Virus record (IMG/VR): IMGVR_UViG_3300043399_000877
Location: 248,001 to 312,000 of that record
Length of the DNA: 64,000 nt
Reading direction: 5' to 3' (one strand)
Every line of letters begins with the position of its first letter. Position 1 is the stretch's first letter. Positions 39,893 through 54,427 of the stretch are shown here, one piece after another. Under the pieces are notes generated by a model. It had not been told where the DNA came from, did not search any database, and saw only the letters and a program-made list of their open reading frames with translations. A program made the translations under genes and the position numbers.

Positions 39893-40765
39893 TTATGTCC
39901 CCCATGCATTACCAAATAGTGTTATATGGAGTCTTGGTGTGAATCTCCATCCTTTTTCCATCGCGAGGCGCGCCACTTGTTGAACTGTGAGATCGTATCC
40001 CTCAGTCCTACCTCCAAGCGGCATAAGATATACTGGACACTCAAGACCAGCGGCTCGGAATTCGGCGACGGCACGCTCAACTTCGTCCACATCAATTTGA
40101 TCTGCGACCACAAACTTGAGATAAGTGTCTGAGTTATTAATCCTACTATACTCAAGAGCAATTTCAGGATTGATAGCATCTTCCCAGCGCTCGCCCGATA
40201 CGGAAAGCTTCGGACTGCAACTCCAAGTAACCTTAAATCTTGTTTGATTGTTGAGATAATCTCGGAACTCTTCGTGTAGATGTTGTGTAGTATTTGTTTC
40301 AAACGTAACATTCTTTAAATCCTGCATCCCAGGATGTTCAAAAAGCTCTACATACAGTCGTTGCCATGCAAGCAACGGCTCACCACCGGTCATAATCAAA
40401 TGTATGTCTTGCCCGTTGTCCTGGGTCCATTTTCCGTTAGGTATTAAACTTAGAAGATGTTCCACAACTTCATCAACTGTGCGATCTTTCATCAAGTGCT
40501 TAAATTCCGGATAGATGCTTGCATAAGTATCACAGCCAGTATGAACCAGTGGTAGGTCTTCAAATCTATTTACCTTTTCTGGAACACCATCTTCGATAAG
40601 TTTCTTAACTTCTGGATTATATCTACTTTTGTTTGATCCGCGAGGTAAACCAAAGTTTTGACAACGGAAGTTACACCCGAATGTTCTTAAAAACAAGCTG
40701 GGAACACCCACAAACTTGCCTTCACCTTGAATGCTGTAAAACGCTTCACTATAGCGCAACTTCAT
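39893..40765 (-). CDS. queE: 7-carboxy-7-deazaguanine synthase (radical SAM)
   Basis: EAFYSIQGEG..GVPS.FLR..GCNFRC...GCDT, TGGEPL, ETN, SPKL, TPRLH. Confidence 0.9.
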   Translation of the reverse strand: MKLRYSEAFYSIQGEGKFVGVPSLFLRTFGCNFRCQNFGLPRGSNKSRYNPEVKKLIEDGVPEKVNRFEDLPLVHTGCDTYASIYPEFKHLMKDRTVDEVVEHLLSLIPNGKWTQDNGQDIHLIMTGGEPLLAWQRLYVELFEHPGMQDLKNVTFETNTTQHLHEEFRDYLNNQTRFKVTWSCSPKLSVSGERWEDAINPEIALEYSRINNSDTYLKFVVADQIDVDEVERAVAEFRAAGLECPVYLMPLGGRTEGYDLTVQQVARLAMEKGWRFTPRLHITLFGNAWGT

Positions 40766-41052
40766 TTTAACATCTCCATATTTACTATTCTCGCAACACG
40801 TTCACCAATGTCGTCTTCTTTAGGAATTACATACAATTGAACTTGCGTTTGGTCAACTCTTCTATCGTAACGTCTGAATTCCATAACATGGCCGCCGGTT
40901 GCAGAATATATTCTAAAACTCAAATCACTTTCTGCATCAATACCGCTGCGCGTTGCCGGGTATACACCGGAATCAACTTTTACTGCGTTTCTTCCAGCGT
41001 ATTCCCATGCCTCACGACACTTTTTCTCAAACCATCTATCAAACCATTTCAT
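40762..41052 (-). CDS. Hypothetical phage protein
   Basis: ATGA overlaps between folE and queE. Confidence 0.7.
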   Translation of the reverse strand: MKWFDRWFEKKCREAWEYAGRNAVKVDSGVYPATRSGIDAESDLSFRIYSATGGHVMEFRRYDRRVDQTQVQLYVIPKEDDIGERVARIVNMEMLK

Positions 41053-41735
41053 CTTGGTGCAAAGTCCTGTTGTAGTTTAATATTATGGAAAAACTCTTCT
41101 TTGGTGCTAGCATCGTTCATAAAGCGACCTTTGAGCACAGTAGTTTGTGTAAGACTGCTGTGCGCCATAATTCCGCGGTTTTCGCAGCAGCCGTGTTGTG
41201 CTTGGATGTAAACACCCACGTTTTCACTACCAGTTGCTGACATAATTTCTCTGGCAATGTCCATTGCCAGTTCTTCTTGCAGTGTACCGCGACGCGCACA
41301 CCATTGTGCGATACGAGTGTATTTGCTCAACCCAATGAGGGTATCAGCGGCGATAATACCGATGTAAGCAACTCCTGTAACTGGCTGGTGGTGATGACTG
41401 CAAACACTTTTTAATTCGCTACGAACAACCAACATGCCAGTGTAAGGCTCGTTCGTGTGATTTGGGAATGCTGTAGCATTCGGTTTAGGATAATAGCGCC
41501 CGCGCATGAGCTCATTCACGTACATTTTAGCCAAACGACGACCGGTATCTTGGCTGTTGGGATCGTTATCTCGATCTATAATCAGGCTGTCTAATACTTC
41601 ATTAAACTTGCCAGTTAGTTCGTCAATGAGTTGTTCTTTTTCACCATCCATGATGAAATCAGATATATTATCAGATGCCCAAAATCTTGCGCCAGCGTCT
41701 TCTATTCGTCCCTTGATTGTTTTTGAAATGTCCAT
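41049..41735 (-). CDS. folE: GTP cyclohydrolase I
   Basis: T.RRLAKMY, SVCSHH, IGLSK..R, LQE, H.C...RG, T....G.F, EEF. Confidence 0.93.
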   Translation of the reverse strand: MDISKTIKGRIEDAGARFWASDNISDFIMDGEKEQLIDELTGKFNEVLDSLIIDRDNDPNSQDTGRRLAKMYVNELMRGRYYPKPNATAFPNHTNEPYTGMLVVRSELKSVCSHHHQPVTGVAYIGIIAADTLIGLSKYTRIAQWCARRGTLQEELAMDIAREIMSATGSENVGVYIQAQHGCCENRGIMAHSSLTQTTVLKGRFMNDASTKEEFFHNIKLQQDFAPR

Positions 41736-41768
41736 GTTGTCTCCGAGCTTGTTATTTAGAAAAGAAAA

Positions 41769-41819
41769 GGTACAATACACTTTTAAATGTATTGTACCAC
41801 GTATTTAGGTTTTTGTCAA
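41769..41819 (-). promoter_or_regulatory. Sigma70 promoter overlapped by an 11-bp hairpin/terminator upstream of folE
   Basis: TTGACA-17 bp-TACAAT. The -10 box lies in one arm of GGTACAATACA-N8-TGTATTGTACC, which is followed by a T-rich run. Confidence 0.65.
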
Positions 41820-42208
41820 GCAGTTTGTATGAGTTCTTTACCAACAGCATACAATGCGGCAGCAACAACTAGGTTTTTAAGGACACTGGTCAATTCCGGT
41901 GTAATAAGTTCTCCACCAACCAGCGGAACGTGGAACATCACCGTTGCCAATAGTGTAAACGCAAGCAGTGCGTAGGCGACATAACCTTGCTGGGTCTGTG
42001 ACAGAACCGGGACAATCAAAGCCAACCCTAGTAGGATTTCAACTGCAACGGCCGCAGCCACCAGCACTGTGGCAAACGGATATCCCATCACAGTACCAAC
42101 AAAACCAACGGTTCCGGCAAAACCATAACCAAAACCTAAAATCGGGACAATCTTAGTAATACCAAAAATTACAAAAAATAGTCCGAGTACATATCTTAAA
42201 ACTTGCAT
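41816..42208 (-). CDS. DoxX-family membrane protein
   Basis: R..LG.FF..G..K, EI..GL.L, FH, KNL. Four hydrophobic helices. AAGGAG RBS. Confidence 0.8.
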   Translation of the reverse strand: MQVLRYVLGLFFVIFGITKIVPILGFGYGFAGTVGFVGTVMGYPFATVLVAAAVAVEILLGLALIVPVLSQTQQGYVAYALLAFTLLATVMFHVPLVGGELITPELTSVLKNLVVAAALYAVGKELIQTA

Positions 42209-42271
42209 CAATTTCTCCTTTTCGTCAAGTATGTATGTTATATAGCACACAGATATAGTTAAATCAAGCAA

Positions 42272-42297
42272 TAGTTGTGTGCAACTGCACACAACTA
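42272..42297 (-). terminator. 12-bp hairpin (probable terminator) followed by a TTGATT-17-TATATA promoter-like element
   Basis: TAGTTGTGTGCA-AC-TGCACACAACTA. Confidence 0.6.
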
Positions 42298-42304
42298 CTC
42301 TGCA

Positions 42305-42517
42305 TTAACTTTTAAAGTACTTGTTGAGGATTTCTAGATGATCCTCATATTCAGCCATGTGGGCTAATTCTTTTTCAATAGCATCCATAATATCGCTGTG
42401 TTCACCGATACCTGCAGGATTACGAAGATACACTTCGATGTTAACGCGATGCTTTTCGACGTGAGCCTTGGCATGCTTGCGTACAGCTTGCAGCATCATC
42501 TCTCGCATTTCGTCCAT
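42305..42517 (-). CDS. Small hypothetical phage protein (NPAGIGEH motif)
   Basis: TAATG coupling to the upstream mini-ORF. Confidence 0.75.
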   Translation of the reverse strand: MDEMREMMLQAVRKHAKAHVEKHRVNIEVYLRNPAGIGEHSDIMDAIEKELAHMAEYEDHLEILNKYFKS

Positions 42518-42633
42518 TACTGTTTTTCCTTACGCTCGTTATACTCTTTGAGCTTTAAAGAGTATTGTTCTTCAGTTAATGCATGCCAACCAACACATTT
42601 GCCAGTCGGTGATCTTCCACATCCACAAGTCAT
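42517..42633 (-). CDS. 38-aa CDGSH-like [2Fe-2S] mini-protein
   Basis: Not in the ORF track. MTCGCGRSPTGKCVGWHALTEEQYSLKLKEYNERKEKQ. ATGA and TAATG coupling to both neighbours. Confidence 0.7.
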   Translation of the reverse strand: MTCGCGRSPTGKCVGWHALTEEQYSLKLKEYNERKEKQ

Positions 42634-43202
42634 TTTTCATCCTTTCTTAACCATGAATCCTGTTCCCAGGGATAGACAAGCCATTGATCTTTTTCACGCT
42701 TGTCAACTTCGTGCCACCAATAGTCTGGCTCGAAAGAACTGCCCCAGTTTTGCGTCATTACAGCGAAACGAACGTTTTCCTTCCATACGCTGTTCCACAT
42801 GTCTTGTTCGTTAGGAAAACAACTGCCTTCCCAATCTTTCTTAATCCAATTAAACGTGTTACCACTGTCGTTTATGTCGTCTACGATAAGGATTTTTTTG
42901 CGTTTTTTAATATCCCAGCGGCTTTTGACATACTCACGTTCGCCTTCGTCAACATAACCGACAGCCATTTCCGGGAGCCAGCAGTTGGTTTCAGTATCAG
43001 CATTTGGTTCGCCATCACGCAGTTGCACCTTAACAGTGTGCATCGGAATGCCGATACGGTGACTTAAAATTAAAGCTAATGGCAATCCGCCACGTGTTAT
43101 TCCCACTACGCAGTCAGGTAGCCATTTGTCCTTCAGCAAATTCATTATAATGCAATCTGCTGCGGTTTCCACGTCTCGCCAAGTGTAATATACTTTATCC
43201 AT
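42630..43202 (-). CDS. Type I purine phosphoribosyltransferase (Gpt/Hpt-like)
   Basis: VGITRGGL, ILIVDDINDSGNT PRPP loop, WLVYPWE. Confidence 0.9.
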   Translation of the reverse strand: MDKVYYTWRDVETAADCIIMNLLKDKWLPDCVVGITRGGLPLALILSHRIGIPMHTVKVQLRDGEPNADTETNCWLPEMAVGYVDEGEREYVKSRWDIKKRKKILIVDDINDSGNTFNWIKKDWEGSCFPNEQDMWNSVWKENVRFAVMTQNWGSSFEPDYWWHEVDKREKDQWLVYPWEQDSWLRKDEK

Positions 43203-43542
43203 TGCTTACCATCGCTTTTATAAGTTCATAATTCTCTTTTGCCGCCTTTAACGTTGGGTATTTTTCCACCATTTCGGCTAATTTTTTCTCTTCATCCATC
43301 TTCCGCTCAGCCCATTCCACAATGTAATCAAGTCTAGGCCCGAGTGAAACAGTTATGTCAGCACCACCGCATGGCATCCAGCATCCAGTGCGCCCATCCC
43401 AATACTCGAACTTACCATAATTAATGCGTATATTTCCGTCGTTTGGGATAGTGTCACTGGGTTGATACCTTGGTGTATGATTGTTTAAGTGTAGCATTAT
43501 GTTGGCATCGTATGAGCCCACGTTGTCTATAAAAGCGCTCAT
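43195..43542 (-). CDS. Hypothetical protein
   Basis: Operon context. C-terminal KYPTLK motif. Confidence 0.65.
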   Translation of the reverse strand: MSAFIDNVGSYDANIMLHLNNHTPRYQPSDTIPNDGNIRINYGKFEYWDGRTGCWMPCGGADITVSLGPRLDYIVEWAERKMDEEKKLAEMVEKYPTLKAAKENYELIKAMVSNG

Positions 43543-43859
43543 TTCAGCCTCTCGAATGTACGATACTTTTCCATCTCTTGTTCATATTGATCTTTGAGTT
43601 CCTTTAGACGTGGATATTTCGATTCCATATCCACATCACGCTTTAACAACATCAAAGCATCGCGCATTTCGTCAATTTCTCTCATAACATCTCTACCATT
43701 TACTGTTAATGCAGCAGAAATGCTAACAGTGCGGTCTTTGCCACCACTTACGATTATGGAAGCATCTCCATATCCAGTGCTTGTATAAGACGTATCAATC
43801 TCGTAGACTGATACGCCCGGTGATGTAATGGAACTTTTAGGAATGTTTACGAAGGTCAT
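43539..43859 (-). CDS. Hypothetical protein
   Basis: Operon context. C-terminal KYPRLK motif. Confidence 0.65.
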   Translation of the reverse strand: MTFVNIPKSSITSPGVSVYEIDTSYTSTGYGDASIIVSGGKDRTVSISAALTVNGRDVMREIDEMRDALMLLKRDVDMESKYPRLKELKDQYEQEMEKYRTFERLK

Positions 43860-44853
43860 TTTCCATCATCTCGCTAACCAAGTCGTCAAACGAGTAATTT
43901 CTATGCCACTTTAAGACAGTTTCTGCCTTCTTGGGATCACCAATTAACAGGTCAACTTCTGCAGGACGATAAAAATTCGGATTAACCTTGACAACAACTT
44001 TGCCATCAATTCGACCAACTTCGTTAACATCGTTGCCTTCCCAGATAATGGTTTTGTTTACGTGACGAACAGCCGATTCCACAAACTCGCGGATTGTGCG
44101 GGTTTCACCAGTTGCAAGCACATAGTTATCAGGCTCTTTATGCTGCAACATCTGCCACATGCCATAAACATAGTCTTTCGCATGACCCCAGTCGCGACGT
44201 GCATTCAAGTTACCTAATTCAACATGCGAACGCTCTCCACGGAACACTTCTGACAATTGATATGTAATCTTTCTAGTCACAAACTCCAACCCACGACGCG
44301 GGCTTTCGTGATTGAAAAGGATACCGTTGCAACCAAACAGTCCATATGACTCTTTGTAGTTTTCAACCGACCAATATGCGAACAACTTGCCAACACCATA
44401 TGGCGATCTCGGATGGAACGGAGTCTTTTCCGATTGTGGAATTTCATGCACCTTGCCGTACAGTTCCGATGTTGAAGCTTGATAGAACTTGGTGTGTGGA
44501 ATCATGTCCAACTGACGTAAAATATCCAAAATTCTCAGTGTACCAAGTGCATTAATGTCGCATGTTTCAACTGGATTTTCAAAGGATACTTTAACGTGAC
44601 TCTGAGCAGCCAAGTTGTAAACTTCATCTGGCTGCGCAATTTTAATAATTTGATACAACGCAGCAGTATCAGTTAAACTTCCGTTATGCAAGTTTAATCT
44701 TGGATGATTAAGAATATTCTTAAGATGATGGCGCTTTTCAAGTGCTCCGCGACGTATAATGCCGTGGACACTGTAACCCTTATCTAGCAGAAGTTCTGCT
44801 AGATAAGAGCCATCTTGTCCGTTTATTCCTGTAATAAGTGCTGACTTCTTCAT
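43837..44853 (-). CDS. gmd: GDP-mannose 4,6-dehydratase
   Basis: ITGINGQDGSYLAE, NLAAQSHV, QASTSELYG, SPYGVGK, LFNHESPRRG, RDWGHAKDY. Confidence 0.96.
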   Translation of the reverse strand: MKKSALITGINGQDGSYLAELLLDKGYSVHGIIRRGALEKRHHLKNILNHPRLNLHNGSLTDTAALYQIIKIAQPDEVYNLAAQSHVKVSFENPVETCDINALGTLRILDILRQLDMIPHTKFYQASTSELYGKVHEIPQSEKTPFHPRSPYGVGKLFAYWSVENYKESYGLFGCNGILFNHESPRRGLEFVTRKITYQLSEVFRGERSHVELGNLNARRDWGHAKDYVYGMWQMLQHKEPDNYVLATGETRTIREFVESAVRHVNKTIIWEGNDVNEVGRIDGKVVVKVNPNFYRPAEVDLLIGDPKKAETVLKWHRNYSFDDLVSEMMENDLRKHS

Positions 44854-44855
44854 TT

Positions 44856-45932
44856 TTACCTCAATATTTCTCTAACCATTTCAGTCGGGTAAGTATAGTT
44901 TTTCACAATGTGCTCGCATTGAGCCTTATACTCGGCTTCGCGAATATTGTCATAATTATACATGAGATCAGTCAAATAGTCAACAAGTTGTTGCCGATGT
45001 TTCAGATAGGAGTCAAAACTTTCAGTCCATTCTGATGGATACTTAAAACAATCCAAGTAAATTTCCGAATAACAAGCACGATCCGGTACTGCTGGTAATG
45101 CACCGCACATGGTGCCTTCAAGTTGACCATAGCCAAAGTTTTCGTGCAGCGAGCAACTGAACACAATCTTTGATTCTCCCAGCATACGGAAGTAATCATC
45201 CTTGGAAAGTTTCTGATCCTGAGTGATCACATACTCCCAGTCTTGGGGCAGATAGTTAACTAAATCACGGAAAATTTCCGGTTGCTTGTCTGAATTTAGA
45301 CGATGGGTAAACACGATCTGTTTTTTGCGATCGGTGTTGTTCTGGAACGGACGGCACTTCTCTTCAAGGTGTATTGACGGATGGGCTGATTTAACAGCAC
45401 GATCAAAATGCTCCACGGGTATGCCCAGGTTATGCAAGAACATGTCTTTATGGAAATGGCTTGCAAAGTAATTTTGTTTACAAGCATAATACCACGCACG
45501 TTCCTGGTTAAAACTCCATTCCTTGCCAACCTTCATACCCAAAATGTCAGTTGGGTCGTGAGCACCTGCTTCCCAAATGCCGTGAATCTCGACGTCGATA
45601 TCGAGCAACTCGCTCATGTAAATGATCGGGGTGATTACAAAGTTCCATGCGTCCGTAATTAAGAAACGGTCACCGTCCTTTACTTGGTTGGTAGAAAACA
45701 GCCGGCTTATAGCAACCGCTTGAGAACCTTTGTAAATATTTGTTTGTGCAAAATCTAAAAATGCACCTTTTGTAGTCTGGTCAGCAACAGCTTCACCATC
45801 GATAGTTTTTACTTGGAAGTTTTTACCAAGTCTTTGAATTTCTTCGTTGAGGATTTTTGGAATATCCTCATACCATATTGCAGTATAGCGATTAGAAAGC
45901 GGTTCAATAGGTACTACCCAAATTGTGTTCAT
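44856..45932 (-). CDS. GT-B (GT4-like) glycosyltransferase
   Basis: FTHRLNSDKQP and SLHENFGYGQLEG (EX7E). Confidence 0.8.
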   Translation of the reverse strand: MNTIWVVPIEPLSNRYTAIWYEDIPKILNEEIQRLGKNFQVKTIDGEAVADQTTKGAFLDFAQTNIYKGSQAVAISRLFSTNQVKDGDRFLITDAWNFVITPIIYMSELLDIDVEIHGIWEAGAHDPTDILGMKVGKEWSFNQERAWYYACKQNYFASHFHKDMFLHNLGIPVEHFDRAVKSAHPSIHLEEKCRPFQNNTDRKKQIVFTHRLNSDKQPEIFRDLVNYLPQDWEYVITQDQKLSKDDYFRMLGESKIVFSCSLHENFGYGQLEGTMCGALPAVPDRACYSEIYLDCFKYPSEWTESFDSYLKHRQQLVDYLTDLMYNYDNIREAEYKAQCEHIVKNYTYPTEMVREILR

Positions 45933-45992: not shown

Positions 45993-46199
45993 TTAGTGCT
46001 GCTTGTGGTTGTGGCGCTTGTTTCGTTCTTTGTAAGCAGCCTTATTTTGGAATTTCAAGTAAGCCTGCCAGTTATAGTCACGGTTGTTGTAAAGAGCCTT
46101 TTCATCAAAAACTCTACCGTCACCTTCAAACCTGCAAAAGTTTCGATAAGCATCGAGATCGTCGAAAATCTTTTTCACTACAGGATTGGTAATAGCCAT
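45993..46199 (-). CDS. Hypothetical phage protein
   Basis: Has its own promoter-like element and a GGGGA RBS. Confidence 0.7.
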   Translation of the reverse strand: MAITNPVVKKIFDDLDAYRNFCRFEGDGRVFDEKALYNNRDYNWQAYLKFQNKAAYKERNKRHNHKQH

Positions 46200-46725: not shown

Positions 46726-46932
46726 TTACTCGCTTGACGTACCCATTTTGCTCATAATGCGATGAATTTCATCCTTGAGCCAAAGTTTTTGAGTTTTTAA
46801 CTTATATACTTCCGGAGAAGTATTAAGGTTTCCGTACTCACGTTCGATATATTCATCTAATTCTCGGTGTTTACGAATTAGTTCTTCAAGATGTGTACTG
46901 TCTTTATCAATCTGCGCAGCGTAATTGCTCAT
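46726..46932 (-). CDS. DUF465/YdcH-like small coiled-coil protein
   Basis: L...HRELD..I......LK..KL.LKDEI. Confidence 0.7.
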   Translation of the reverse strand: MSNYAAQIDKDSTHLEELIRKHRELDEYIEREYGNLNTSPEVYKLKTQKLWLKDEIHRIMSKMGTSSE

Positions 46933-48595
46933 TTTCCAATGCCTCAAGGTTTTCAATTTCGTCGTCATCAAAGTCTTCTGAATGGCTTTCAGTTTCCACT
47001 TCTTCCACCTTGGGAGGTTCGATGACGTTAAACAATGCACTAAAGCTGGTTCTAGCGTTAATGCTTTTAATTCCAGTTTTACCACGAGCAGCGTTCCCTG
47101 GGATACCCATCCAATAACGATTGTGCTCGTCTATGAGCTCAAGTGCTCGGTCACGATCTGATGTAGCAAATATATCCTCAACAATATCTTTAAAGAACTT
47201 TTGATCAAACTTGCTACCAGACAACATGCTCGGATAAATTCCGTTATCGTATTGTCTGTTTGCTTCCTGAACTGCGTTAATGTGCATCCAGATGTTATGA
47301 CCCATTTGTATTGCATAACTGAAGCTATCCCAACTTGTTCTACCAATCTTATCGATTTTGTTAAAGTCAGGTAGCACGTTGTAATGCTCTGGGTTACGGA
47401 GATCGAACGGTACGCCACCGAGTTCAGCATCAGTTTTTCTAACACCTGGTTTGTAATGACAGATGTCACTTACTTTGAGACCGGCGCTTATGGGGCTGTC
47501 TTCAAATACTTTAAAATAGTTGTCTTGAAGAACTGCGTCTCTGTACAAACGATTGTCAAGGGCATACTTTTTGTCATCAACAGCCTTAAGCATCCTATAC
47601 AACCACTTGGAATTCGGTGGAGTTTCTGTTTGAAGATAAATCTGCCCGTTTGCAGTTGCAAGGAATGGACTTGCACAGTCAAAAGTTATAAGGAAATTTT
47701 CGTTGTGATATTTTCTAATAGCTCGTTGAATGTCAGTAAAAGCAACAGCCCACTCAAGCCTACTGGTTCCCAGGAAGTGTACAACATCTTGGTATCCCTT
47801 TTCTAGCAGACCATCAAAGCGCATCATAACCAGACGCTTTAGTGCAAGGTGCAAATCACAAGTGTGTTGACCACCCATACTCCAACCATTAAAGTGATTG
47901 TTTGGATATATCTTGGGATCAGCATAACGCTTCATGATGTTGTACCAGTTGTCGGCGTCAGCGTGGTTTTCACCCTGTAAAACAGTCAAAAACTTACAGT
48001 TACCGTTTCTTCTACGGATCCAGTCTTCGTTGTTGTACATAGTAGCTGAGACGGCTTCCTGATAGGTGGTAATACCAGTTTTCTCTTTACCCTTGGTTGA
48101 ACGTGTAAGGATCCAGGTCGGAGTATCGAGTGTCATTCCGTAATCCATATAAGTGTCCATCCACTCCAACACCTGTGTGCGTTTTGCGTGTGCTTTTGGA
48201 CAATTGGGATCCTTCCAGTCAGCTTCCCAAACACCTTGACCGATCTGATAGCCACCACTATCACCCAGTAGCCAACTATTTTGACGGTCGCGGTTGCGAA
48301 TCATATCCTCTCTCGCATCAAACTTGTTGATGTCCAGGTTTGCATGACCTGCTGAGTACAGGCTCCATTTGTAATTAAACATTCCCTCTTTGGGGTTTAG
48401 ATAATTTAGACTTTCGACACCGTTGGGAAAGTTAGATGGTATTCTTGCAGGATCTACGTATTGTTCGTGACGCTGCTTGCCCACATACGTTGCATAAAAT
48501 CCACTAAGTGCCGGCAAAAATACGGCATAGTCTTTTTGAGCAGTGGTCAAGTCAGTATTCATTACTCTCTGCTCGTTATTGTTTTCATTTGTCAT
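46907..48595 (-). CDS. dpdA: DpdA-like / TGT-fold 7-deazaguanine DNA transglycosylase
   Basis: TGT-fold motifs GDSGGYQ, TLD.P, VLQG, GWSMGG, HFLG, TFDCAS. Lies next to queD, folE and queE. Confidence 0.72.
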   Translation of the reverse strand: MTNENNNEQRVMNTDLTTAQKDYAVFLPALSGFYATYVGKQRHEQYVDPARIPSNFPNGVESLNYLNPKEGMFNYKWSLYSAGHANLDINKFDAREDMIRNRDRQNSWLLGDSGGYQIGQGVWEADWKDPNCPKAHAKRTQVLEWMDTYMDYGMTLDTPTWILTRSTKGKEKTGITTYQEAVSATMYNNEDWIRRRNGNCKFLTVLQGENHADADNWYNIMKRYADPKIYPNNHFNGWSMGGQHTCDLHLALKRLVMMRFDGLLEKGYQDVVHFLGTSRLEWAVAFTDIQRAIRKYHNENFLITFDCASPFLATANGQIYLQTETPPNSKWLYRMLKAVDDKKYALDNRLYRDAVLQDNYFKVFEDSPISAGLKVSDICHYKPGVRKTDAELGGVPFDLRNPEHYNVLPDFNKIDKIGRTSWDSFSYAIQMGHNIWMHINAVQEANRQYDNGIYPSMLSGSKFDQKFFKDIVEDIFATSDRDRALELIDEHNRYWMGIPGNAARGKTGIKSINARTSFSALFNVIEPPKVEEVETESHSEDFDDDEIENLEALENEQLRCAD

Positions 48596-49776: not shown

Positions 49777-49799
49777 ATATAAATCTCCGTTATATTCTT

Positions 49800-49827: not shown

Positions 49828-49835
49828 GTAATAAG

Positions 49836-50597
49836 TTATTTTCGTATCGTTTTGTTATAATCGACAGCCGCTCTAAGTGTATTTAGATCGACACCTTTTT
49901 TCTCTGCCATATTTAGAAGAGCAGCAGTATCTTTGGGGAAGCAATATCCACCCCAACCACGAAAACCAAGCTCTGGATGAACAAAAGTGTGGCTGTCACC
50001 AATTCTTGGATCTTTTATCAAACCGTCGCGCACAGCATAGAAGTCTAATCCAGATGCATTACAAAAATCAAACATTTCGTTAAAAAAACTTAACTTGGTT
50101 GCAAGAAAAGAGTTTTCAAAATATTTGATAGCAATACAATTTTCTATGCTGTATTCATAAAAGATTAAATCAGGATATACTCGTATGAAAAAATCCTTCC
50201 AAAAATCGCACATAGGCCCATTAGACAGTATAGTGTATTTTAGATTTTGCATATCTTCCACTGCGCTCTCTGCTCTTAAAAATTCTGGAGAGAACGTTAT
50301 CGAATGATCGGGGAATTGGTCACGTATTGTTTGTAATCCTTCAAGATCAATCGTGCTTTTTATTAATATCGGAACTGAAGCAGGGGTGTCGTTTATGACA
50401 TCGATCACGTTACTGATATCGCAACTGCCATCCGAAGACGGCGGAGTTGATACACAACAAATTACACCATCGATGTGGTGTAAATCGGATATATTATTAA
50501 CGTTGTATTTTGGATCAACAATAAAAAGATTATAATGATCTTTTAGCGATTCAAAAAACGCCTGGCCAACAAAGCCATAACCAGCAATTACATACAT
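49836..50597 (-). CDS. UDP-glucose 6-dehydrogenase-like protein lacking the C-terminal domain
   Basis: IAGYGFVG, CVSTP, IKST, SPEFLR, KYFENSFLATK, GWGGYCFPKD. Only 253 aa. Confidence 0.85.
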   Translation of the reverse strand: MYVIAGYGFVGQAFFESLKDHYNLFIVDPKYNVNNISDLHHIDGVICCVSTPPSSDGSCDISNVIDVINDTPASVPILIKSTIDLEGLQTIRDQFPDHSITFSPEFLRAESAVEDMQNLKYTILSNGPMCDFWKDFFIRVYPDLIFYEYSIENCIAIKYFENSFLATKLSFFNEMFDFCNASGLDFYAVRDGLIKDPRIGDSHTFVHPELGFRGWGGYCFPKDTAALLNMAEKKGVDLNTLRAAVDYNKTIRK

Positions 50598-50600
50598 TGA

Positions 50601-51344
50601 TTATTCCGCTATTTTTGCTTCCACAAGGTATTGTAGTGTTTCAAAAGTATCCCGCCAGTCCTTAACACTAAAAGTACGACCGTTTTGCAGCTTTTCTACT
50701 GCTGATGCGATGGAATGGTCGTTACCACCGGGCTCGGTGCGATCACCAAAAAAGAATATTTTAGATTCTTTTTTAAAGTCATTCAGTACTTGGCTCTTAT
50801 CACAACCTCTTGGGAATATGTCTAGCCCTGTTTCACCACCTATTTGAGCATGCAATTCTGGAAAACGAAGATTAAACTCTTGAGCAATTTGTGCTCGCTC
50901 ACCAGTTTCAATGTCCCACTTACGATACATTAGTCGTTCACCTAGAGTTGCACCCCTGCCCACGATGCTAAAATTAACAGTTCCGGTTCTTATTTCTATG
51001 TGGGTACCGGTCCTAAGTGGAAATTTACTAGCCTTGAGATGCTCAAGTAACCAGCGTTCAACTTCTATTCCCATGCGCCAATCGTTTTGGAATATGCGAT
51101 GCCCTTTGGTCCAGACTTCATTACCAGAACAATTATATACACGTTCAACACTTAGGCATAGATCGATACCCAACTGTTCAATAGTTTTATTATAGTCGCT
51201 TCCGGTTACCAGGTATACTCTATTTCTTCTACAAAAATCAAGGAACCATTCTTCAAAATTTGCATCTATTTTTCCCCTGCTGGGGGTAAGTGTGCCGTCT
51301 ACGTCAAATAAAAAATTATTTGTTGTTTTTGTTTGCTGCGTCAT
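50601..51344 (-). CDS. HAD-IIB phosphomannomutase (eukaryotic PMM-like)
   Basis: FDVDGTLT, VTGSD, G.HIE.R.G..NFS..GR, GG..G.DIFP.G.DK, FFGD....GGND. Confidence 0.85.
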   Translation of the reverse strand: MTQQTKTTNNFLFDVDGTLTPSRGKIDANFEEWFLDFCRRNRVYLVTGSDYNKTIEQLGIDLCLSVERVYNCSGNEVWTKGHRIFQNDWRMGIEVERWLLEHLKASKFPLRTGTHIEIRTGTVNFSIVGRGATLGERLMYRKWDIETGERAQIAQEFNLRFPELHAQIGGETGLDIFPRGCDKSQVLNDFKKESKIFFFGDRTEPGGNDHSIASAVEKLQNGRTFSVKDWRDTFETLQYLVEAKIAE

Positions 51345-51759
51345 TGTCAATCTCACTTTCCACTACACGCTTTCTGAGGTCACTGCTGCTAAAACGATGA
51401 TCCCGTTTGTTAAAATATAAGTCAATTCCACGTTTTTTGCATATATCACGCCCGGTAAACTCTTTTTCTCTGTACTCTTCACCGAGTATTCTCACATCAA
51501 TTCTATACAAATTTAAAATGTCTTCAAGATCACGTTCAGATGCATAAGGTATTATTTCGTCAACATACTTTACGCCCTTGAGCTGTGTATATCTTTCAAC
51601 AATACTCTGGACCGGAGAGTTTTTATTCCTCCGGTCCAAGCTAGGATCTAGTTGCAATCCGCAAATCAAGTAATCACACTGTTCTTTTGCTTCGCGTAGC
51701 ATTTGAACATGTCCAGCATGCAACAAATCAAATGCAGAGGCAGTAAATCCCACTCTCAT
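51316..51759 (-). CDS. Glycerol-3-phosphate cytidylyltransferase-like protein (TagD family)
   Basis: FDLLHAGH, ER...L..VKYVDEI, R.H.FSSS.LR. Confidence 0.85.
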   Translation of the reverse strand: MRVGFTASAFDLLHAGHVQMLREAKEQCDYLICGLQLDPSLDRRNKNSPVQSIVERYTQLKGVKYVDEIIPYASERDLEDILNLYRIDVRILGEEYREKEFTGRDICKKRGIDLYFNKRDHRFSSSDLRKRVVESEIDNDAANKNNK

Positions 51760-51760
51760 T

Positions 51761-54427
51761 TTAGACGATCCTGAACAAACTGGTAAAGGTTTCATTTTGT
51801 TTTGTGCTTTCTAAGTCATATTCCAGAACGCCAATAAGGTTGTCTAGCTTATTGTCAATGATTGTTTCTTCCATTGCAGCATCATCAAAAGGCAATTCCT
51901 TAAACCAGTCAGGAAGTCTAAGTTCGTCAGTCGGATATGCAACACTTGTAAATCCCATCGGGTTATTTTTTAATTTACAAACAATAACCTTCATTCCATC
52001 AACGATTTCAATGCTGTATTTGTCGCCGTTCATTCGTTTTAATGTATTCCAGTTAATACTTGCCCGAACGTGTCCGGGTAAAACTGCTTTACTGCCTTTT
52101 TTCTTTTCTTCACGTTCGTAATGCTGAATGTTGTTTGCACGTTTTGGAGAACCTTTTTCGTAGCCAGGACGGCTCTTAAATTCATTCCTGAATTCTTTAA
52201 CTGATGCAAGTATTTCAGCTTCGGGGCGGCCTTTTAGAACCATAAGTAACACTTCCATTAAGTATTCTTGCATGAATACCGGAGTATCCGAACGCTTTAG
52301 GTCCAATCCCATTGCCTTTACTTTTCCAGGTTTGCCGTCCACGTCTTTTCTCTTACCCTCTTCGTCATATACTAACACAGCATAACGCTTCTTGGTAATA
52401 AAAAGTCCACTTTCACCGACTATTTCTCGACCAGCAGCAATAACTTCTGCTCTGCTCTTTGGACAATGGAAAGCCTGGCCCATGAAATCGGAGAAACTGC
52501 GGTTTACTTCATCAGCTATTTGGTCGTATAGTTCAACAACTGTTTCCTTGGTCCACGGAACCAAGTTCTTTTCAATGTCATCTTTCAATACCGGGTACAT
52601 GCTAAAATACACAGAGTCTGTATCACCGTATATGATAGTTTTTCCAATATGATTGTATTCTCCAGTTGCAATTTCATTAACTTTTGCAGCCATGTGCTTG
52701 GCAATTCCACGACCAGTAAGGGTTGTACTTTGTCCGATGCGCTTATCAAAAAATCTACAACCTGGGTTAAGAATAGCACCATAAAGACTGTTAAGGTTGA
52801 TCTTTTTAACCAGCTGTCGTTTATCCCAAAACTCTATTTCAGATTGTACTCCAGCTTCAACAGCTTTTTTCTTCATAGCTTGAAGCTCTTTACGCTCTTT
52901 GTACCATCTTGCAAGCAATCCGGGTATAACAGCCTCAAACTCAGTCGTAAAAATAGTGCCGTTTGCACTGATCATCCAAGGCTTGTTACTGTCAAATATA
53001 AGTTTAAATGCCTGTGCTGCGCTCATTACTTCGCTATTACCGTTAACCCAGTCAACAGTTACGTCGAAATCGACTCGCTCATCCATAATTGCAGCATATT
53101 CTAGGGTACCAAACAATCCTTCCCATGCAGCACTGAAACTCTTTTTCTTTAGAGTCATCTGATCTTCAATATATTTGTCAGTGGCTGTTGGCCTAACTTG
53201 ACCGATTATACTTTCTGGTGCCATGTTTAATGCACGAATAACCGATGGATACAGGCTGTTCAAGTCCATTGAGCCAATCCAACGATGGAAGCCTTTTTTT
53301 GGATTCGCAACATATGCGCCGGCTGCTTGAGTGTCTTCCTCAAAGTTTCCACGATTCTGGACTTGCATTCCACGTCGATGTGCTTCGTTAATGATTGCCT
53401 GTTCAGTAACAGCCACAGCGCCCATGGTTGTCTGTATTAACACAGTGTTATCATGAGCGATCTCGTTAGCCAGATCAATAAACCGCAGTTTTTTATCTAG
53501 TTTGTCAAGTAGTGCAACGTCCTGTCGGTTATACTCAATGAATGTTCTAAAATCATTGTTGTAGAGTTGATCCAGTGTGCCTTCATATTGCGTTTTACGT
53601 TCGTTTAGTTCATATTCACCGATTGCGTCCAGTCGATAACTGTGTCGTTCTTCGTAAGTATACTTTCTGTAAAGTTCAAGACTGTCTAAATGTATGCGGC
53701 CTACTAAATCGTAAGTTTCGGCAGTCTTACCAAATTTTTCATACTCACGTTTCTTTGGAAACTGATTCCATAAACAAAATCTGCGAGTATCGCTTTTGCT
53801 CATAACTCTTGCTACACGGTTTACCATGTAGGGAATATCGTAGCCTTCGCTGTTCCAACCACTGAGAATGTCTGCATCCTCAATTAAGTTGAAAAACTCT
53901 TCAAGCATTTCAATTTCAGACTCGAATATAAAAGTATTGCTGAAATCTTTAACTAATTCACGAGCATCGGCAACGGATAGCGATTTGGGTGGGATCGCCA
54001 AAGTTACCAAACTGTCCATCCATTGTAAATGCACAGTGATAGCAGTGATTGGCATAAATGGATCGTTTGTTGGAGCAAATCCCCGGTTTGGGTCAAAGTC
54101 AGTTTCAATGTCAAAGAACGCAATATGCAACTTTGGTGCATCTTGGTTGATGTAGTTTTCACTTAAACATTGAAATATAGGATTTATATCACTTTCGAAC
54201 AACCGCTTGTTCTTGTTTATGGCAAGTTCTTTACGATACTCTTTGGTATTTTTACAAACGATCCTGGAAAGCGGATCTCCATAGACGCTGCGAAACTTTC
54301 CACGCTGGTCTTCATAATAAAAAGTATATTTTGTGGGATATTGTTGATACATGCGCTTTCCGTCTTTGCGCTCTACAACATTTATAACGTCAGCATCCCT
54401 ATCAAAAAATGCATCAATGTACGGCAT
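51761..54427 (-). CDS. Family B DNA polymerase (gp43-like)
   Basis: Exo motifs DIET, GWN...YD and YN.QD. Pol motifs DLNSLYPS, K...NSLYG, YGDTDS and KKRY. Confidence 0.96.
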   Translation of the reverse strand: MPYIDAFFDRDADVINVVERKDGKRMYQQYPTKYTFYYEDQRGKFRSVYGDPLSRIVCKNTKEYRKELAINKNKRLFESDINPIFQCLSENYINQDAPKLHIAFFDIETDFDPNRGFAPTNDPFMPITAITVHLQWMDSLVTLAIPPKSLSVADARELVKDFSNTFIFESEIEMLEEFFNLIEDADILSGWNSEGYDIPYMVNRVARVMSKSDTRRFCLWNQFPKKREYEKFGKTAETYDLVGRIHLDSLELYRKYTYEERHSYRLDAIGEYELNERKTQYEGTLDQLYNNDFRTFIEYNRQDVALLDKLDKKLRFIDLANEIAHDNTVLIQTTMGAVAVTEQAIINEAHRRGMQVQNRGNFEEDTQAAGAYVANPKKGFHRWIGSMDLNSLYPSVIRALNMAPESIIGQVRPTATDKYIEDQMTLKKKSFSAAWEGLFGTLEYAAIMDERVDFDVTVDWVNGNSEVMSAAQAFKLIFDSNKPWMISANGTIFTTEFEAVIPGLLARWYKERKELQAMKKKAVEAGVQSEIEFWDKRQLVKKINLNSLYGAILNPGCRFFDKRIGQSTTLTGRGIAKHMAAKVNEIATGEYNHIGKTIIYGDTDSVYFSMYPVLKDDIEKNLVPWTKETVVELYDQIADEVNRSFSDFMGQAFHCPKSRAEVIAAGREIVGESGLFITKKRYAVLVYDEEGKRKDVDGKPGKVKAMGLDLKRSDTPVFMQEYLMEVLLMVLKGRPEAEILASVKEFRNEFKSRPGYEKGSPKRANNIQHYEREEKKKGSKAVLPGHVRASINWNTLKRMNGDKYSIEIVDGMKVIVCKLKNNPMGFTSVAYPTDELRLPDWFKELPFDDAAMEETIIDNKLDNLIGVLEYDLESTKQNETFTSLFRIV

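What the first reader, a model, noticed from the sequence alone, without database searches (positions are those of the whole stretch)
39893..54427. 7-deazaguanine pathway interleaved with a sugar-nucleotide and glycosyltransferase kit: possible glycosylated deazaguanine in phage DNA
Seen: the co-oriented order is polB, cytidylyltransferase, PMM, UDP-Glc dehydrogenase, clamp, dpdA-like, queD-like, GT4, gmd, PRTase, folE, queE. This block has no queC, queF or gat-queC. Known: FolE, QueD and QueE make 7-carboxy-7-deazaguanine (CDG), DpdA exchanges it or a derivative into DNA, and PMM and Gmd feed GDP-6-deoxyhexose synthesis. The described phage products (dPreQ0, dPreQ1, dG+, dADG, dCDG and related) are not glycosylated as far as I recall. 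Inference: the GT, sitting between queD and gmd, adds a deoxysugar or uronate to the inserted base, giving a new anti-restriction hypermodification.
Basis: partly seen in the sequence, partly recalled or inferred. Interest (0 to 1): 0.88.

Follow-up and report, generated by a model that had tools for sequence, protein, structure and literature searches.

The report
Deazaguanine DNA module with glycosyltransferase
A giant uncultured phage carries, inside its DNA-replication genes, a kit for replacing guanine in DNA with a 7-deazaguanine, and this kit is tightly linked in many phages and bacteria to a sugar-transferring enzyme, so its DNA may carry a sugar-decorated purine, a kind of DNA base not found in the papers searched.

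Summary
The gene order is real: all genes lie on the minus strand, from polB (54427) to QueE (39893). Three labels need correcting. The "queD-like" gene is DpdL, a QueD paralogue that lacks the catalytic Cys. No true QueD is in the window. The "UDP-Glc dehydrogenase" is a 253-aa mini form without the UDP-binding domain. The "clamp" could not be verified.

The 562-aa protein is a distant TGT/DpdA-superfamily enzyme by fold, with three Asp-containing motifs aligned to E. coli Tgt. The 358-aa protein is a GT4-type GT-B glycosyltransferase with R/K and EX7E motifs.

The main new result is comparative. This glycosyltransferase is almost always encoded next to DpdL, the DpdA-like gene, FolE or QueE. 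That holds in 80 viral contigs, in cultured phages (PA5oct, Phosso, ACP17, X1, BCSR5), and as a two-gene GT+DpdA-like pair in about 18 bacterial genome contigs.

The sugar-nucleotide genes are not conserved with it (PMM 1/80, Gmd 3/80, NTase 8/80). They vary by lineage, as donor-tailoring genes would.

A glycosylated 7-deazaguanine is the best reading (about 0.5), but the chemistry is untested. PA5oct, which is cultured and resists G-site restriction enzymes, makes the idea directly testable.

The parts
51761..54427 (-). Family B DNA polymerase (888 aa). It heads the replication module.
   Evidence: Pfam DNA_pol_B and exo1 domains, phrog_262 E 1e-200. 49% identical to PA5oct polB and 73% to the jumbo contig L004.
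51316..51795 (-). Cytidylyltransferase-fold nucleotidyltransferase (159 aa), like HldE domain II or TagD. Candidate activator of a sugar or alcohol phosphate.
   Evidence: PF01467 E 2e-13; TIGR02199 and TIGR01518 hits below their cut-offs. PDB sequence hits to ethanolamine-P and glycerol-3-P cytidylyltransferases. Present in only 8/80 related loci, in several of them directly upstream of the GT.
50601..51356 (-). PMM-type HAD-IIB phosphomutase (251 aa).
   Evidence: PF03332 E 5e-30, phrog_29277 E 3e-84. Among cultured phages, clear homologues (48-51% identity) occur only in cyanophages S-SSM7, S-SSM6a and P-TIM68, plus two weak hits in unannotated human-faecal phage records. Present in 1/80 related loci.
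49836..50597 (-). Mini nucleotide-sugar-dehydrogenase-like protein (253 aa). It has an N-terminal Rossmann fold and the central catalytic domain, but no C-terminal UDP-binding domain.
   Evidence: PF00984 E 5e-25; matches profile positions 69-295 of 413 only. GYGFVG and GGYCFPKD motifs present. PDB UGDH chains align only up to about residue 320. Homologue sits two genes after QueE in Campylobacter phage CP220.
49045..49776 (-). Possible sliding clamp (243 aa), unverified.
   Evidence: Only phrog_12062 (unknown function); no Pfam or PDB sequence hit. Conserved just after polB in PA5oct, Phosso (annotated there as sliding clamp) and 57/80 loci.
46907..48595 (-). DpdA-like nucleic-acid guanine transglycosylase (562 aa). 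A distant TGT-superfamily member with an acidic C-terminal tail.
   Evidence: No Pfam, PHROG, NCBIfam or PDB sequence hit. AF2 model pLDDT 89; the top 12 PDB fold matches are all TGT. hhalign to E. coli Tgt aligns the DSGGxQ, xxLD and FDC motifs, that is D112, D157 and D306. Related to ACP17 and X1 proteins and weakly to phiST DpdA3. The same family sits beside QueF, QueC, Gat and FolE in Vibrio phage 2.275.O.
46726..46932 (-). Small DUF465 protein (about 68 aa as called in near-identical contigs).
   Evidence: PF04325 E 1e-8. Called as 68 aa in L002 and L003. Role unknown.
46298..46720 (-). DpdL homologue (140 aa). A QueD/PTPS paralogue proposed in the literature to decarboxylate CDG to 7-deazaguanine.
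   Evidence: Motif L-EVD-HRH-M-F equals LxxxHRHxF. phmmer against phiST DpdL E 5e-16. Adjacent to the GT in 71/80 loci.
45993..46199 (-). Small basic protein p68, conserved between DpdL and the GT.
   Evidence: Found at -0.2 kb from the GT in 25-34 of 80 loci. pI 9.5. Function unknown.
44856..45932 (-). GT4-type (GT-B fold, retaining-type) glycosyltransferase (358 aa). Proposed to glycosylate the deazaguanine.
   Evidence: AF2 pLDDT 92. Top PDB matches are BshA, MshA, GlgM, PglA and WaaG. Top viral match is the ACP17 GT, TM 0.86. Invariant R211, K216 and E264-x7-E272. 37% identical to PA5oct EST35_0317, which lies next to the DpdA-like gene.
43837..44853 (-). GDP-mannose 4,6-dehydratase (338 aa), directly downstream of the GT.
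   Evidence: PF16363 E 4e-135 over the full length. Present in only 3/80 related loci, once again directly after the GT (L034).
43195..43859 (-). Two small ORFs (106 and 115 aa) of unknown function.
   Evidence: No family hits. Found in 7-9 of 80 loci by tblastn and 9-12 of 80 by clustering.
42630..43202 (-). Purine phosphoribosyltransferase (190 aa).
   Evidence: PF00156 E 1e-13. PDB hits to archaeal purine PRTases 1VDM and GpT-2. In 41/80 loci, about 2.4 kb after the GT.
41816..42517 (-). p70 (phrog_1811) and a DoxX membrane ORF. The DoxX ORF is an insertion specific to this variant.
   Evidence: DoxX is absent between p70 and FolE in the 99%-identical contigs L002 and L003.
41049..41780 (-). 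GTP cyclohydrolase I (FolE).
   Evidence: PF01227 E 1e-37, phrog_2197; NCBIfam FolE models are the best hits but score below their cut-offs. In 64/80 loci.
40762..41052 (-). p96, a small conserved ORF between FolE and QueE.
   Evidence: Found in 16-17 of 80 loci. No family hit.
39893..40765 (-). QueE-like radical-SAM enzyme (290 aa), with an insertion between the cluster cysteines.
   Evidence: phrog_2076 E 1e-51. TIGR QueE models match in two stretches, below their cut-offs. N-terminal FYSIQGEG...GCNFRC and GCDT motifs. 31% identical to PA5oct QueE and 30% to CP220 QueE.

Best explanation
The block is the replication-linked DNA-modification module of a jumbo phage; the source contig is 381 kb.

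Shown by sequence or fold:
- FolE and a QueE-like radical-SAM enzyme are present.
- DpdL, a QueD paralogue, is present.
- A distant TGT/DpdA-superfamily transglycosylase is present.
- A purine PRTase is present.
- A GT4-type GT-B glycosyltransferase is present.

Inferred pathway:
1. GTP is converted to CDG by FolE, a QueD supplied by the host or encoded elsewhere in the genome, and QueE.
2. DpdL turns CDG into 7-deazaguanine, the activity proposed for phiST DpdL.
3. The DpdA-like enzyme exchanges the deaza base for guanine in phage DNA after replication.
4. The PRTase may salvage the released guanine, or alternatively ribosylate the deaza base.
5. The GT4 enzyme transfers a sugar from an NDP-sugar onto the deazaguanine. 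It could act on the free base before insertion, as HuiG does on a free deazaguanine and as BshA and MshA do on other small acceptors. Or it could act on the base already in DNA, as T4 glucosyltransferases do.
6. In this lineage PMM, the NTase, Gmd and perhaps the mini-UGDH make or tailor the donor sugar, a GDP-mannose or 6-deoxyhexose type. Other lineages carry other tailoring genes or use host NDP-sugars.

The predicted result is a bulky glycosylated purine that blocks restriction and other DNA-targeting defences. The atom that carries the sugar is unknown.
For: Fold and motifs:
- The 562-aa model matches TGT structures only among its top 12 hits.
- Its three Asp-containing motifs align with those of E. 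coli Tgt.
- The 358-aa model matches GT4 enzymes. R211, K216 and the EX7E motif are invariant.
- DpdL is identified by motif and homology.

The DpdA-like family works with deazaguanine genes:
- In Vibrio phage 2.275.O it is followed by QueF, a YhhQ-like transporter, QueC, Gat and FolE.

GT linkage in phages:
- In 80 IMG/VR loci chosen only by GT homology, DpdL is present in 71, FolE in 64, DpdA-like in 63, QueE in 48 and PRTase in 41. Most absences are at contig ends.
- The linkage persists through different gene orders in PA5oct, Phosso, ACP17, X1, BCSR5 and L092.

GT linkage in bacteria:
- In bacterial genome contigs, 18 of 26 GT hits lie directly beside a DpdA-like gene, in either order.
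- Five more lie beside DpdL, FolE, PTPS or QueE.
- Of the other three, all weak partial hits, none has such a neighbour.

Variable sugar-tailoring genes flank the GT in different lineages:
- Gmd, NTase and mini-UGDH.
- DegT aminotransferase and GFO/IDH/MocA oxidoreductase.
- A PIG-L deacetylase in BCSR5.

Experimental hint: PA5oct DNA resists G-containing restriction sites and is hit by G-modification-sensing END nucleases (PMC12191111).

Chemical precedent: HuiG glycosylates the N2 of a free 7-deazaguanine (PMC7439116).
Against: - There is no chemical evidence for a sugar on the base in any of these phages.
- If DpdL yields plain 7-deazaguanine, as in phiST, C7 has no obvious hydroxyl or amine acceptor. 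The sugar would have to go on N2 or O6, form a C-glycoside, or need an unseen hydroxylation step.
- The GT family is acidic (median pI 5.5) and is not structurally close to the T4 DNA glucosyltransferases. Direct action on DNA is therefore uncertain.
- Most of the 80 viral loci belong to one broad clade, so part of the co-occurrence is shared ancestry.
- The sugar-nucleotide genes are rare among relatives.
- PMM's closest phage homologues are in cyanophages, in a context not examined here.
- The Cys3His zinc site of TGT is not conserved.
- DNA versus tRNA as the substrate is untested.
- No QueD is present in the window.
Confidence: 0.5

Rival explanations
1. The module makes an unglycosylated deazaguanine in DNA, dDG as in phiST or dCDG. 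The GT and sugar genes act on something else, such as the host envelope or O-antigen, virion proteins, or a small metabolite.
For: - phiST, with FolE, QueD, QueE, DpdL and DpdA3, gives plain dDG.
- The sugar-nucleotide genes are poorly conserved with the module.
- PMM homologues occur in cyanophages.
- A second, full-length UGDH and a DegT-like gene lie far from the module.
- The nearest structural relatives of the GT act on small molecules or glycolipids.
Against: - The GT itself is almost never found away from DpdL or DpdA-like genes. This holds in phage lineages with different gene orders, and as a bare two-gene GT+DpdA-like pair in bacterial chromosomes.
- phiST and Vibrio phage 2.275.O, which lack the GT, show it is a separable add-on that travels with the deazaguanine genes.
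Confidence: 0.22
2. The GT glycosylates the free deaza base or nucleotide to make a soluble deazapurine glycoside that is not inserted into DNA. It would be huimycin- or dapiramicin-like, for example an inhibitor of host enzymes or a precursor storage form. The PRTase would feed a nucleotide route.
For: - HuiG precedent: a GT acts on a free 7-deazaguanine.
- Top structural matches BshA and MshA use small acceptors.
- The GT is acidic.
- A conserved purine PRTase is present.
Against: - The GT is tightly adjacent to a TGT-superfamily base-exchange enzyme, including two-gene pairs in bacteria.
- The module sits inside the DNA-replication gene block.
- PA5oct DNA itself behaves as G-modified.
Confidence: 0.12
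3. The TGT-like enzyme and the GT modify tRNA rather than DNA, giving a queuosine-like, glycosylated wobble base on phage or host tRNAs.
For: - The closest solved folds are tRNA-guanine transglycosylases.
- Glycosylated queuosine exists in eukaryotic tRNA (my own knowledge, not checked here).
Against: - The position between polB, the putative clamp and RNase H is conserved.
- The family is weakly related to phiST DpdA3, the proposed DNA enzyme of a fully dDG-substituted phage.
- PA5oct DNA resists restriction at G sites.
- The bacterial pairs lie in defence-island-like settings.
Confidence: 0.05

Closest known systems
Phage dDG system of Cellulophaga phage phiST (FolE, QueD, QueE, DpdL, DpdA3; Hutinet et al. 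2023, PMC10516641)
   Same: - FolE and QueE are present.
- There is a DpdL homologue with the LxxxHRHxF motif.
- The transglycosylase is a very distant TGT relative without a Pfam TGT hit.
- There is no QueC in the module.
- The module lies next to the replication genes.
   Different: - No GT in phiST.
- The transglycosylase here is 562 aa, against 259 aa, and only weakly alignable (hhalign 82%).
- No QueD in this window.
- A purine PRTase and sugar genes are added.
T-even phage 5-hydroxymethylcytosine glucosylation (alpha- and beta-glucosyltransferases)
   Same: Proposed logic: a phage-specific non-canonical base in DNA is further decorated by a GT-B-fold enzyme using an NDP-sugar, to escape restriction. 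The sugar identity diversifies between lineages.
   Different: - The base here would be a purine analogue installed by base exchange, not a pyrimidine made at the nucleotide level.
- The GT is GT4-like and does not resemble the T4 enzymes among the top fold matches.
- Action on DNA is unproven.
Huimycin and dapiramicin biosynthesis (HuiG glycosyltransferase; PMC7439116)
   Same: A FolE/QueD/QueE-type pathway is clustered with a glycosyltransferase that puts a sugar (GlcNAc) on a 7-deazaguanine, at the exocyclic N2.
   Different: - It is an actinomycete secondary-metabolite cluster with QueC and a methyltransferase.
- It has no transglycosylase, and the product is a free small molecule.
- Homology between HuiG and this GT was not tested.
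Bacterial Dpd system (DpdA/B/C with restriction components; PMC10164549)
   Same: A TGT-superfamily enzyme puts 7-deazaguanines into DNA. The bacterial GT+DpdA-like pairs found here lie in defence-island-like contexts.
   Different: - No DpdB or DpdC homologues were identified here.
- The transglycosylase family lacks the zinc site and any Pfam TGT hit.
- A GT partner is not part of the described Dpd system.
Pseudomonas jumbo phage PA5oct (Wroclawvirus)
   Same: - Same module order: polB, clamp-like, DpdA-like (35% identity), GT (37%), DpdL, QueE, RNase H.
- Its DNA is reported as G-modified by restriction pattern and END-nuclease sensitivity.
   Different: - No PMM, NTase, mini-UGDH, Gmd, PRTase or FolE within the region examined.
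- The chemical nature of the modification is not given in the one paper read.

Membership tests
TGT/DpdA superfamily (nucleic-acid guanine transglycosylases) | TGT-type (beta/alpha)8 barrel fold | tested here: met
   AF2 model pLDDT 89.3. The 12 best PDB matches are all bacterial or human TGT, E 1.5e-5 to 3e-4, TM about 0.5 on the target.
TGT/DpdA superfamily (nucleic-acid guanine transglycosylases) | Catalytic and substrate aspartates in the DSGGFQ, xxFD and FDC motifs | tested here: met
   D112, D157 and D306 are invariant in 84 family members. They align with the corresponding E. coli Tgt motifs by hhalign (86%, E 5e-6).
TGT/DpdA superfamily (nucleic-acid guanine transglycosylases) | Match to the curated family model (Pfam PF01702) or to solved TGT/DpdA sequences | tested here: not met
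   No Pfam, NCBIfam, PHROG or PDB sequence hit for the protein, for 84 relatives, or for their profile.
TGT/DpdA superfamily (nucleic-acid guanine transglycosylases) | Cys3-His zinc site of TGT | tested here: not met
   No conserved cysteine cluster in the 84-sequence alignment. The only well-conserved His residues after the barrel are H273 and H433.
TGT/DpdA superfamily (nucleic-acid guanine transglycosylases) | Genomic association with 7-deazaguanine synthesis genes | tested here: met
   Lies next to FolE, QueE and DpdL here and in 63/80 loci. Lies next to QueF, QueC, Gat and FolE in Vibrio phage 2.275.O.
TGT/DpdA superfamily (nucleic-acid guanine transglycosylases) | Exchanges guanine for a 7-deazaguanine in DNA, not tRNA | not testable with these tools
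   Indirect only: position in the replication module, and the restriction phenotype of PA5oct DNA.
DpdL (QueD paralogue, proposed CDG decarboxylase) | LxxxHRHxF in place of QueD's CxxxHGH, and homology to phiST CGPG_00067 | tested here: met
   The sequence reads FLEVDHRHMF. phmmer E 5e-16 and tblastn 32% identity to phiST DpdL. Alignment with the PA5oct, ACP17, Phosso and X1 homologues. Motif definition from PMC10516641.
DpdL (QueD paralogue, proposed CDG decarboxylase) | Decarboxylates CDG to 7-deazaguanine | not testable with these tools
   This activity is itself only proposed in the literature.
QueD (CPH4 synthase) | PTPS family match with the catalytic Cys (CxxxHGH) | tested here: not met
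   No window ORF matches phiST QueD or an 18-sequence PTPS profile built from relatives. The 140-aa protein has Leu in place of Cys.
GT4-type GT-B glycosyltransferases | Two-Rossmann-domain GT-B fold resembling GT4 enzymes | tested here: met
   AF2 pLDDT 91.7. Best PDB matches BshA, MshA, GlgM, PglA and WaaG, E 6.5e-10 and weaker, TM about 0.6.
GT4-type GT-B glycosyltransferases | Donor-binding Arg/Lys pair and EX7E motif in the C-terminal domain | tested here: met
   R211, K216, E264 and E272 are invariant in 24 and in 50 aligned relatives, including those of PA5oct, ACP17 and Phosso. That these motifs define GT4 is from my own knowledge.
GT4-type GT-B glycosyltransferases | Match to curated Pfam Glycos_transf_1 above threshold | tested here: not met
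   No Pfam hit for the window protein, only phrog_2170 at E 7e-4. Three of the 120 listed relatives carry PF00534.
GT4-type GT-B glycosyltransferases | Transfers a sugar to a deazaguanine (acceptor identity) | not testable with these tools
   Inferred from gene linkage only.
GDP-mannose 4,6-dehydratase | Full-length match to the family model | tested here: met
   PF16363 E 3.7e-135, residues 6-329 against profile positions 1-332.
UDP-glucose/GDP-mannose dehydrogenase | Three-domain architecture including the C-terminal nucleotide-sugar-binding domain | tested here: not met
   Only 253 aa, covering profile positions 69-295 of 413. There is no room for a C-terminal domain before the next gene. 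The catalytic Cys motif is retained.
QueE (CDG synthase) | Radical-SAM QueE family match and N-terminal substrate motif | tested here: inconclusive
   phrog_2076 E 1e-51, but the TIGR QueE models score far below their cut-offs and match in two pieces. FYSIQGEG and GCNFRC...GCDT motifs are present, with an insertion of about 42 aa.

The most novel reading that the evidence does not exclude
Phage (and some bacterial) DNA carries a glycosylated 7-deazaguanine. This would be a sugar-bearing purine analogue in DNA, something none of the papers I searched describes. It would be made by a mobile two-gene core: a zinc-less DpdA-like transglycosylase plus a GT4 glycosyltransferase. Phages would use it as counter-defence. 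Alphaproteobacterial defence islands would use it as a self-mark. The sugar would be diversified lineage by lineage through swappable tailoring genes. Because the GT travels with DpdL in phages, the linkage could even be a C-glycoside at C7 of 7-deazaguanine.
Probability: 0.45. Interest if true: 0.9.

Novelty: new variant of a known kind. Interest (0 to 1): 0.8.

Why it matters
- As far as I know, the glycosylated DNA bases described so far are all pyrimidines. A glycosylated deazapurine would extend the chemistry of natural DNA and of anti-restriction strategies.
- It would give a concrete candidate for the unidentified G modification of the therapeutic-candidate jumbo phage PA5oct.
- It would define a widespread family: more than 7,700 DpdA-like and more than 2,200 GT homologues in metagenomes.
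- The bacterial GT+DpdA-like pairs hint at a possible new modification-based defence system.
- The enzymes could become tools for site-selective DNA glycosylation.

Tried and rejected
- Curated family and PDB sequence searches gave nothing for the 562-aa and 358-aa proteins. The same held for a profile of 84 relatives. Only structure prediction and profile-profile comparison resolved them.
- Megablast of the whole block against cultured phages found no match.
- I looked for a true QueD among all window ORFs with phiST QueD and with an 18-member PTPS profile. None was found.
- I considered that the GT might be a relative of the T4 DNA glucosyltransferases. They are not among the top 50 matches in either fold library.
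- I considered that the weak GT hits in Xanthomonas and Erwinia 227-kb phages were the same system. Their context is GlmS plus a BshB-like deacetylase with no deazaguanine genes, so I excluded them.
- I first took X1's annotated 'queuine tRNA-ribosyltransferase' to be an independent DpdA type. hhalign shows it is a diverged relative of the same family (95%).
- The 'clamp' could not be confirmed by sequence.
- One exact-sequence contig look-up failed, probably because the called gene start differs.
- The 2024 MMBR review on deazaguanines is not held in the library.

Full report
OBSERVATION

All ORFs of the block lie on the minus strand. In transcription order they are:
- polB, 51761-54427
- a cytidylyltransferase-fold NTase, 51316-51795
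- a PMM-type HAD-IIB enzyme, 50601-51356
- a 253-aa UDPG/MGDP-dehydrogenase-like protein, 49836-50597
- a 243-aa protein, 49045-49776
- a 149-aa protein
- a 562-aa protein, 46907-48595
- a DUF465 protein
- a 140-aa protein, 46298-46720
- a 68-aa protein
- a 358-aa protein, 44856-45932
- Gmd, 43837-44853
- two small ORFs
- a purine PRTase, 42630-43202
- p70
- DoxX
- FolE, 41049-41780
- p96
- a QueE-like radical-SAM enzyme, 39893-40765

The three proteins that carry the hypothesis (dpdA-like, queD-like, GT4) had no curated Pfam or NCBIfam hit, so they needed separate work.

THE THREE KEY PROTEINS

1. The 140-aa protein is not QueD.
- It is homologous to phiST CGPG_00067 (tblastn 32% identity, phmmer E 5e-16).
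- It carries LEVDHRHMF. This is the LxxxHRHxF signature that Hutinet et al. 2023 use to separate DpdL, a QueD paralogue proposed to decarboxylate CDG to 7-deazaguanine, from QueD with its CxxxHGH motif.
- No window ORF matches a true QueD. In contrast, 18 of 80 relatives have a PTPS gene beside QueE.

2. The 562-aa protein is a distant TGT/DpdA-superfamily enzyme.
- It belongs to a very large, unannotated family: more than 7,700 hits, none with a Pfam domain, and 901 50%-identity clusters.
- An 84-sequence alignment has invariant D112, S113, G115, D157, H273, G276 and D306.
- The AF2 model (pLDDT 89) matches only tRNA-guanine transglycosylases among its best 12 PDB hits.
- hhalign against E. 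coli Tgt aligns GDSGGYQ with TDSGGFQ, MTLD with MIFD, and TFDCASP with MFDCVMP.
- It is related to proteins of ACP17 (96.6%) and X1 (95%), and weakly to phiST DpdA3 (82%).
- The TGT zinc site is not conserved.
- In Vibrio phage 2.275.O the same family (E 4e-102) follows polB and the clamp-like gene. It is in turn followed by QueF, a YhhQ-like transporter, QueC, a Gat-type amidohydrolase and FolE. This ties the family to deazaguanine metabolism independently of the present locus.

3. The 358-aa protein is a GT4-type GT-B enzyme.
- The AF2 model (pLDDT 92) matches GT4 retaining glycosyltransferases BshA, MshA, GlgM, PglA and WaaG.
- Its best viral match is the ACP17 'glycosyl transferase family 1' protein, TM 0.86.
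- R211, K216 and E264-x7-E272 are invariant.

LINKAGE OF THE GLYCOSYLTRANSFERASE TO DEAZAGUANINE GENES

Cultured phages:
- In PA5oct the GT homologue (37% identity) directly follows the DpdA-like homologue (35% identity). DpdL and QueE come next, between polB, the clamp-like gene and RNase H.
- GT and DpdL are also neighbours in Phosso, ACP17, X1, BUDD and BCSR5, with different gene orders.
  - ACP17: QueD, FolE, x, DpdA-like, GT, DpdL, QueE.
  - X1: FolE, PAPS-reductase-like, x, x, GT, DpdA-like, DpdL, QueE.
  - BCSR5: DpdL, AAA, x, PIG-L, x, GT, a 446-aa hypothetical in the DpdA-like position (homology not tested), x, QueE, then FolE further on.

Viral contigs (80 IMG/VR loci retrieved only by GT homology, 38-53% identity):
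- DpdL in 71
- FolE in 64
- DpdA-like in 63
- QueE in 48
- PRTase in 41
- Most absences are at contig ends.

Bacterial genome contigs:
- 18 of 26 GT hits lie directly beside a DpdA-like gene, in either order. Most are in alphaproteobacterial chromosomes and have no DpdL, FolE or QueE nearby.
- Five more lie beside DpdL, FolE, PTPS or QueE.
- The remaining three are weak partial hits.
- Two of the bacterial pairs that I examined sit among defence-type genes: an OLD-family ATPase-TOPRIM, nSTAND3, and AAA_15/21.

Phages lacking the GT:
- Two phages that have a DpdA-type enzyme lack the GT. phiST has DpdL and plain dDG. Vibrio phage 2.275.O has the QueC/QueF route.
- The GT is therefore a separable add-on that travels with the transglycosylase. 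In phages it travels with DpdL as well.

THE SUGAR GENES

Counts among the 80 loci are PMM 1, Gmd 3, NTase 8 and mini-UGDH 13.

The slots directly flanking the GT are filled by different sugar-tailoring genes in different lineages:
- Gmd at +1.1 kb, here and in L034
- mini-UGDH at +1.1 kb, in 5 loci
- NTase at -0.8 kb, in 4 loci
- a DegT-type aminotransferase at +1.1 kb, in 13 loci
- GFO/IDH/MocA oxidoreductase and Zn-ADH genes
- a PIG-L-type deacetylase in BCSR5

This pattern is what one expects if the donor sugar of a conserved GT is being diversified. PA5oct has none of these genes in the region and would use host NDP-sugars.

There is one caveat. The mini-UGDH lacks the UDP-binding domain. 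A homologue sits two genes after QueE in Campylobacter phage CP220. Hutinet 2023 lists CP220 as completely modified with a 7-deazaguanine. The mini-UGDH may therefore belong to deazapurine chemistry rather than sugar-nucleotide chemistry.

MECHANISM

Shown:
- The enzyme families and their conserved catalytic motifs.
- The conserved gene linkage.

Inferred:
- FolE, a host or distal QueD, and QueE give CDG.
- DpdL converts CDG, to 7-deazaguanine according to the published proposal.
- The DpdA-like enzyme swaps the product for G in DNA.
- The PRTase salvages the released guanine or ribosylates the deaza base.
- The GT adds a sugar, either to the free base before insertion or to the base in DNA.

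Precedents and hints:
- HuiG adds GlcNAc to N2 of a free 7-deazaguanine.
- The GT is acidic and its structural neighbours use small acceptors. Both points weakly favour action on the free base.
[quoted passage not shown] The paper read does not identify the modification.

The attachment atom is unknown. If DpdL gives plain 7-deazaguanine, the options are N2, O6, a C-glycoside, or an unseen hydroxylation.

COMPARISON WITH WHAT IS KNOWN, AND NOVELTY

The closest described system is the phiST-type DpdL/DpdA3 dDG pathway. The proposed logic parallels T-even hmC glucosylation. The chemical precedent is huimycin. Searches of the held literature found nothing on a glycosylated deazaguanine in DNA, and DpdL appears in only one paper. 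I rate this a new variant of a known kind, a deazaguanine DNA modification system with an integral glycosyltransferase. It could turn out to be a new class of DNA base.

VERDICT

  - The GT-deazaguanine coupling is strong.
  - The sugar-kit coupling is weak and lineage-specific.
  - The precursor is probably not CDG.
  - The chemistry is untested.
- Confidence that the module modifies DNA guanines with a deazaguanine is about 0.85.
- Confidence that the final base is glycosylated is about 0.5.

Noticed in passing
window 4403-23464 (+ strand), continuing upstream of the window (L098): About 13 consecutive radical-SAM ORFs, one with a B12-binding domain (11032-12501). They are interleaved with a few non-rSAM ORFs. 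More rSAM genes lie upstream of the window on the same 381-kb phage contig. This is an extraordinary cluster of unknown function, not a structural-gene block.
   Followed up: partly
window 19265-20008 and 23451-24104 (+ strand): Two divergent QueC-like PP-loop ATPases, with SGGADS and a C-terminal CGxCxWCxER motif. Pfam QueC E 2.6e-4 (below cut-off) and 1e-7. They sit inside the rSAM cluster. Among cultured phages the only hit is a 26%-identical ORF in Ralstonia phage RsoM2USA. They could amidate CDG with an amine, as QueC-like amide synthetases are proposed to do in roseomycin-type clusters, or be unrelated.
   Followed up: partly
window 25516-31226 (- strand): A polyamine-type gene set: a saccharopine/carboxynorspermidine-dehydrogenase-like gene, an unknown 422-aa ORF, an AMP-binding (adenylating) enzyme of 467 aa, a 189-aa ORF, and an Orn/DAP/Arg decarboxylase. 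Together with the QueC-like genes this raises the untested idea of an amine-linked modification.
   Followed up: no
window 175-1419 (+) and 1-186 (-): A second, full-length nucleotide-sugar dehydrogenase (414 aa), and the end of a short DegT/DnrJ-type aminotransferase-like ORF cut by the window start. With Gmd, a DegT enzyme could give a GDP-4-amino-4,6-dideoxyhexose.
   Followed up: partly
window 41816-42292 (- strand): The DoxX membrane-protein ORF is absent from the 99%-identical contigs L002 and L003, where p70 is followed almost directly by FolE. It is a recent insertion or deletion inside the module.
   Followed up: partly
L101 (Campylobacter phage CP220) 5937-7771: A mini-UGDH homologue (CPT_0019) lies two genes after QueE (CPT_0017). 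A protein with a cytidylyltransferase domain (CPT_0026) is nearby. Hutinet 2023 lists CP220 as a phage whose DNA is fully modified with a 7-deazaguanine. The mini-UGDH and NTase may have a role in deazapurine chemistry.
   Followed up: partly
L105-L120 (bacterial genome contigs, mostly Alphaproteobacteria): A two-gene GT plus DpdA-like pair occurs in bacterial genome contigs without nearby FolE, QueE or DpdL. In the two loci examined it lies beside an OLD-family ATPase-TOPRIM, nSTAND3 and AAA_15/21 genes. This may be a Dpd-like modification and defence system.
   Followed up: partly
window 1-30000 versus 30000-64000: G+C shifts from 0.31-0.36 to 0.38-0.49, with a peak of 0.49 at 34-36 kb. The peak lies over a MoxR-type AAA ATPase (35317-36399) and a DUF2201 metallopeptidase/VWA protein (33963-35228).
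   Followed up: no
window 31243-32358 (- strand): A 371-aa protein with an Mtd_N (major tropism determinant N-terminal) domain, so probably a receptor-binding or tail-fibre-like protein. It sits between the polyamine genes and the MoxR/VWA pair.
   Followed up: no
L004/L005 5133-5735; L096/window 24931-25515: 2OG-Fe(II) oxygenase genes appear next to polB in the 260-275-kb relatives. An Asp/Asn-hydroxylase-like oxygenase lies at the end of the rSAM cluster in the window. Either could be a hydroxylase that creates a glycosyl acceptor. Not tested.
   Followed up: no
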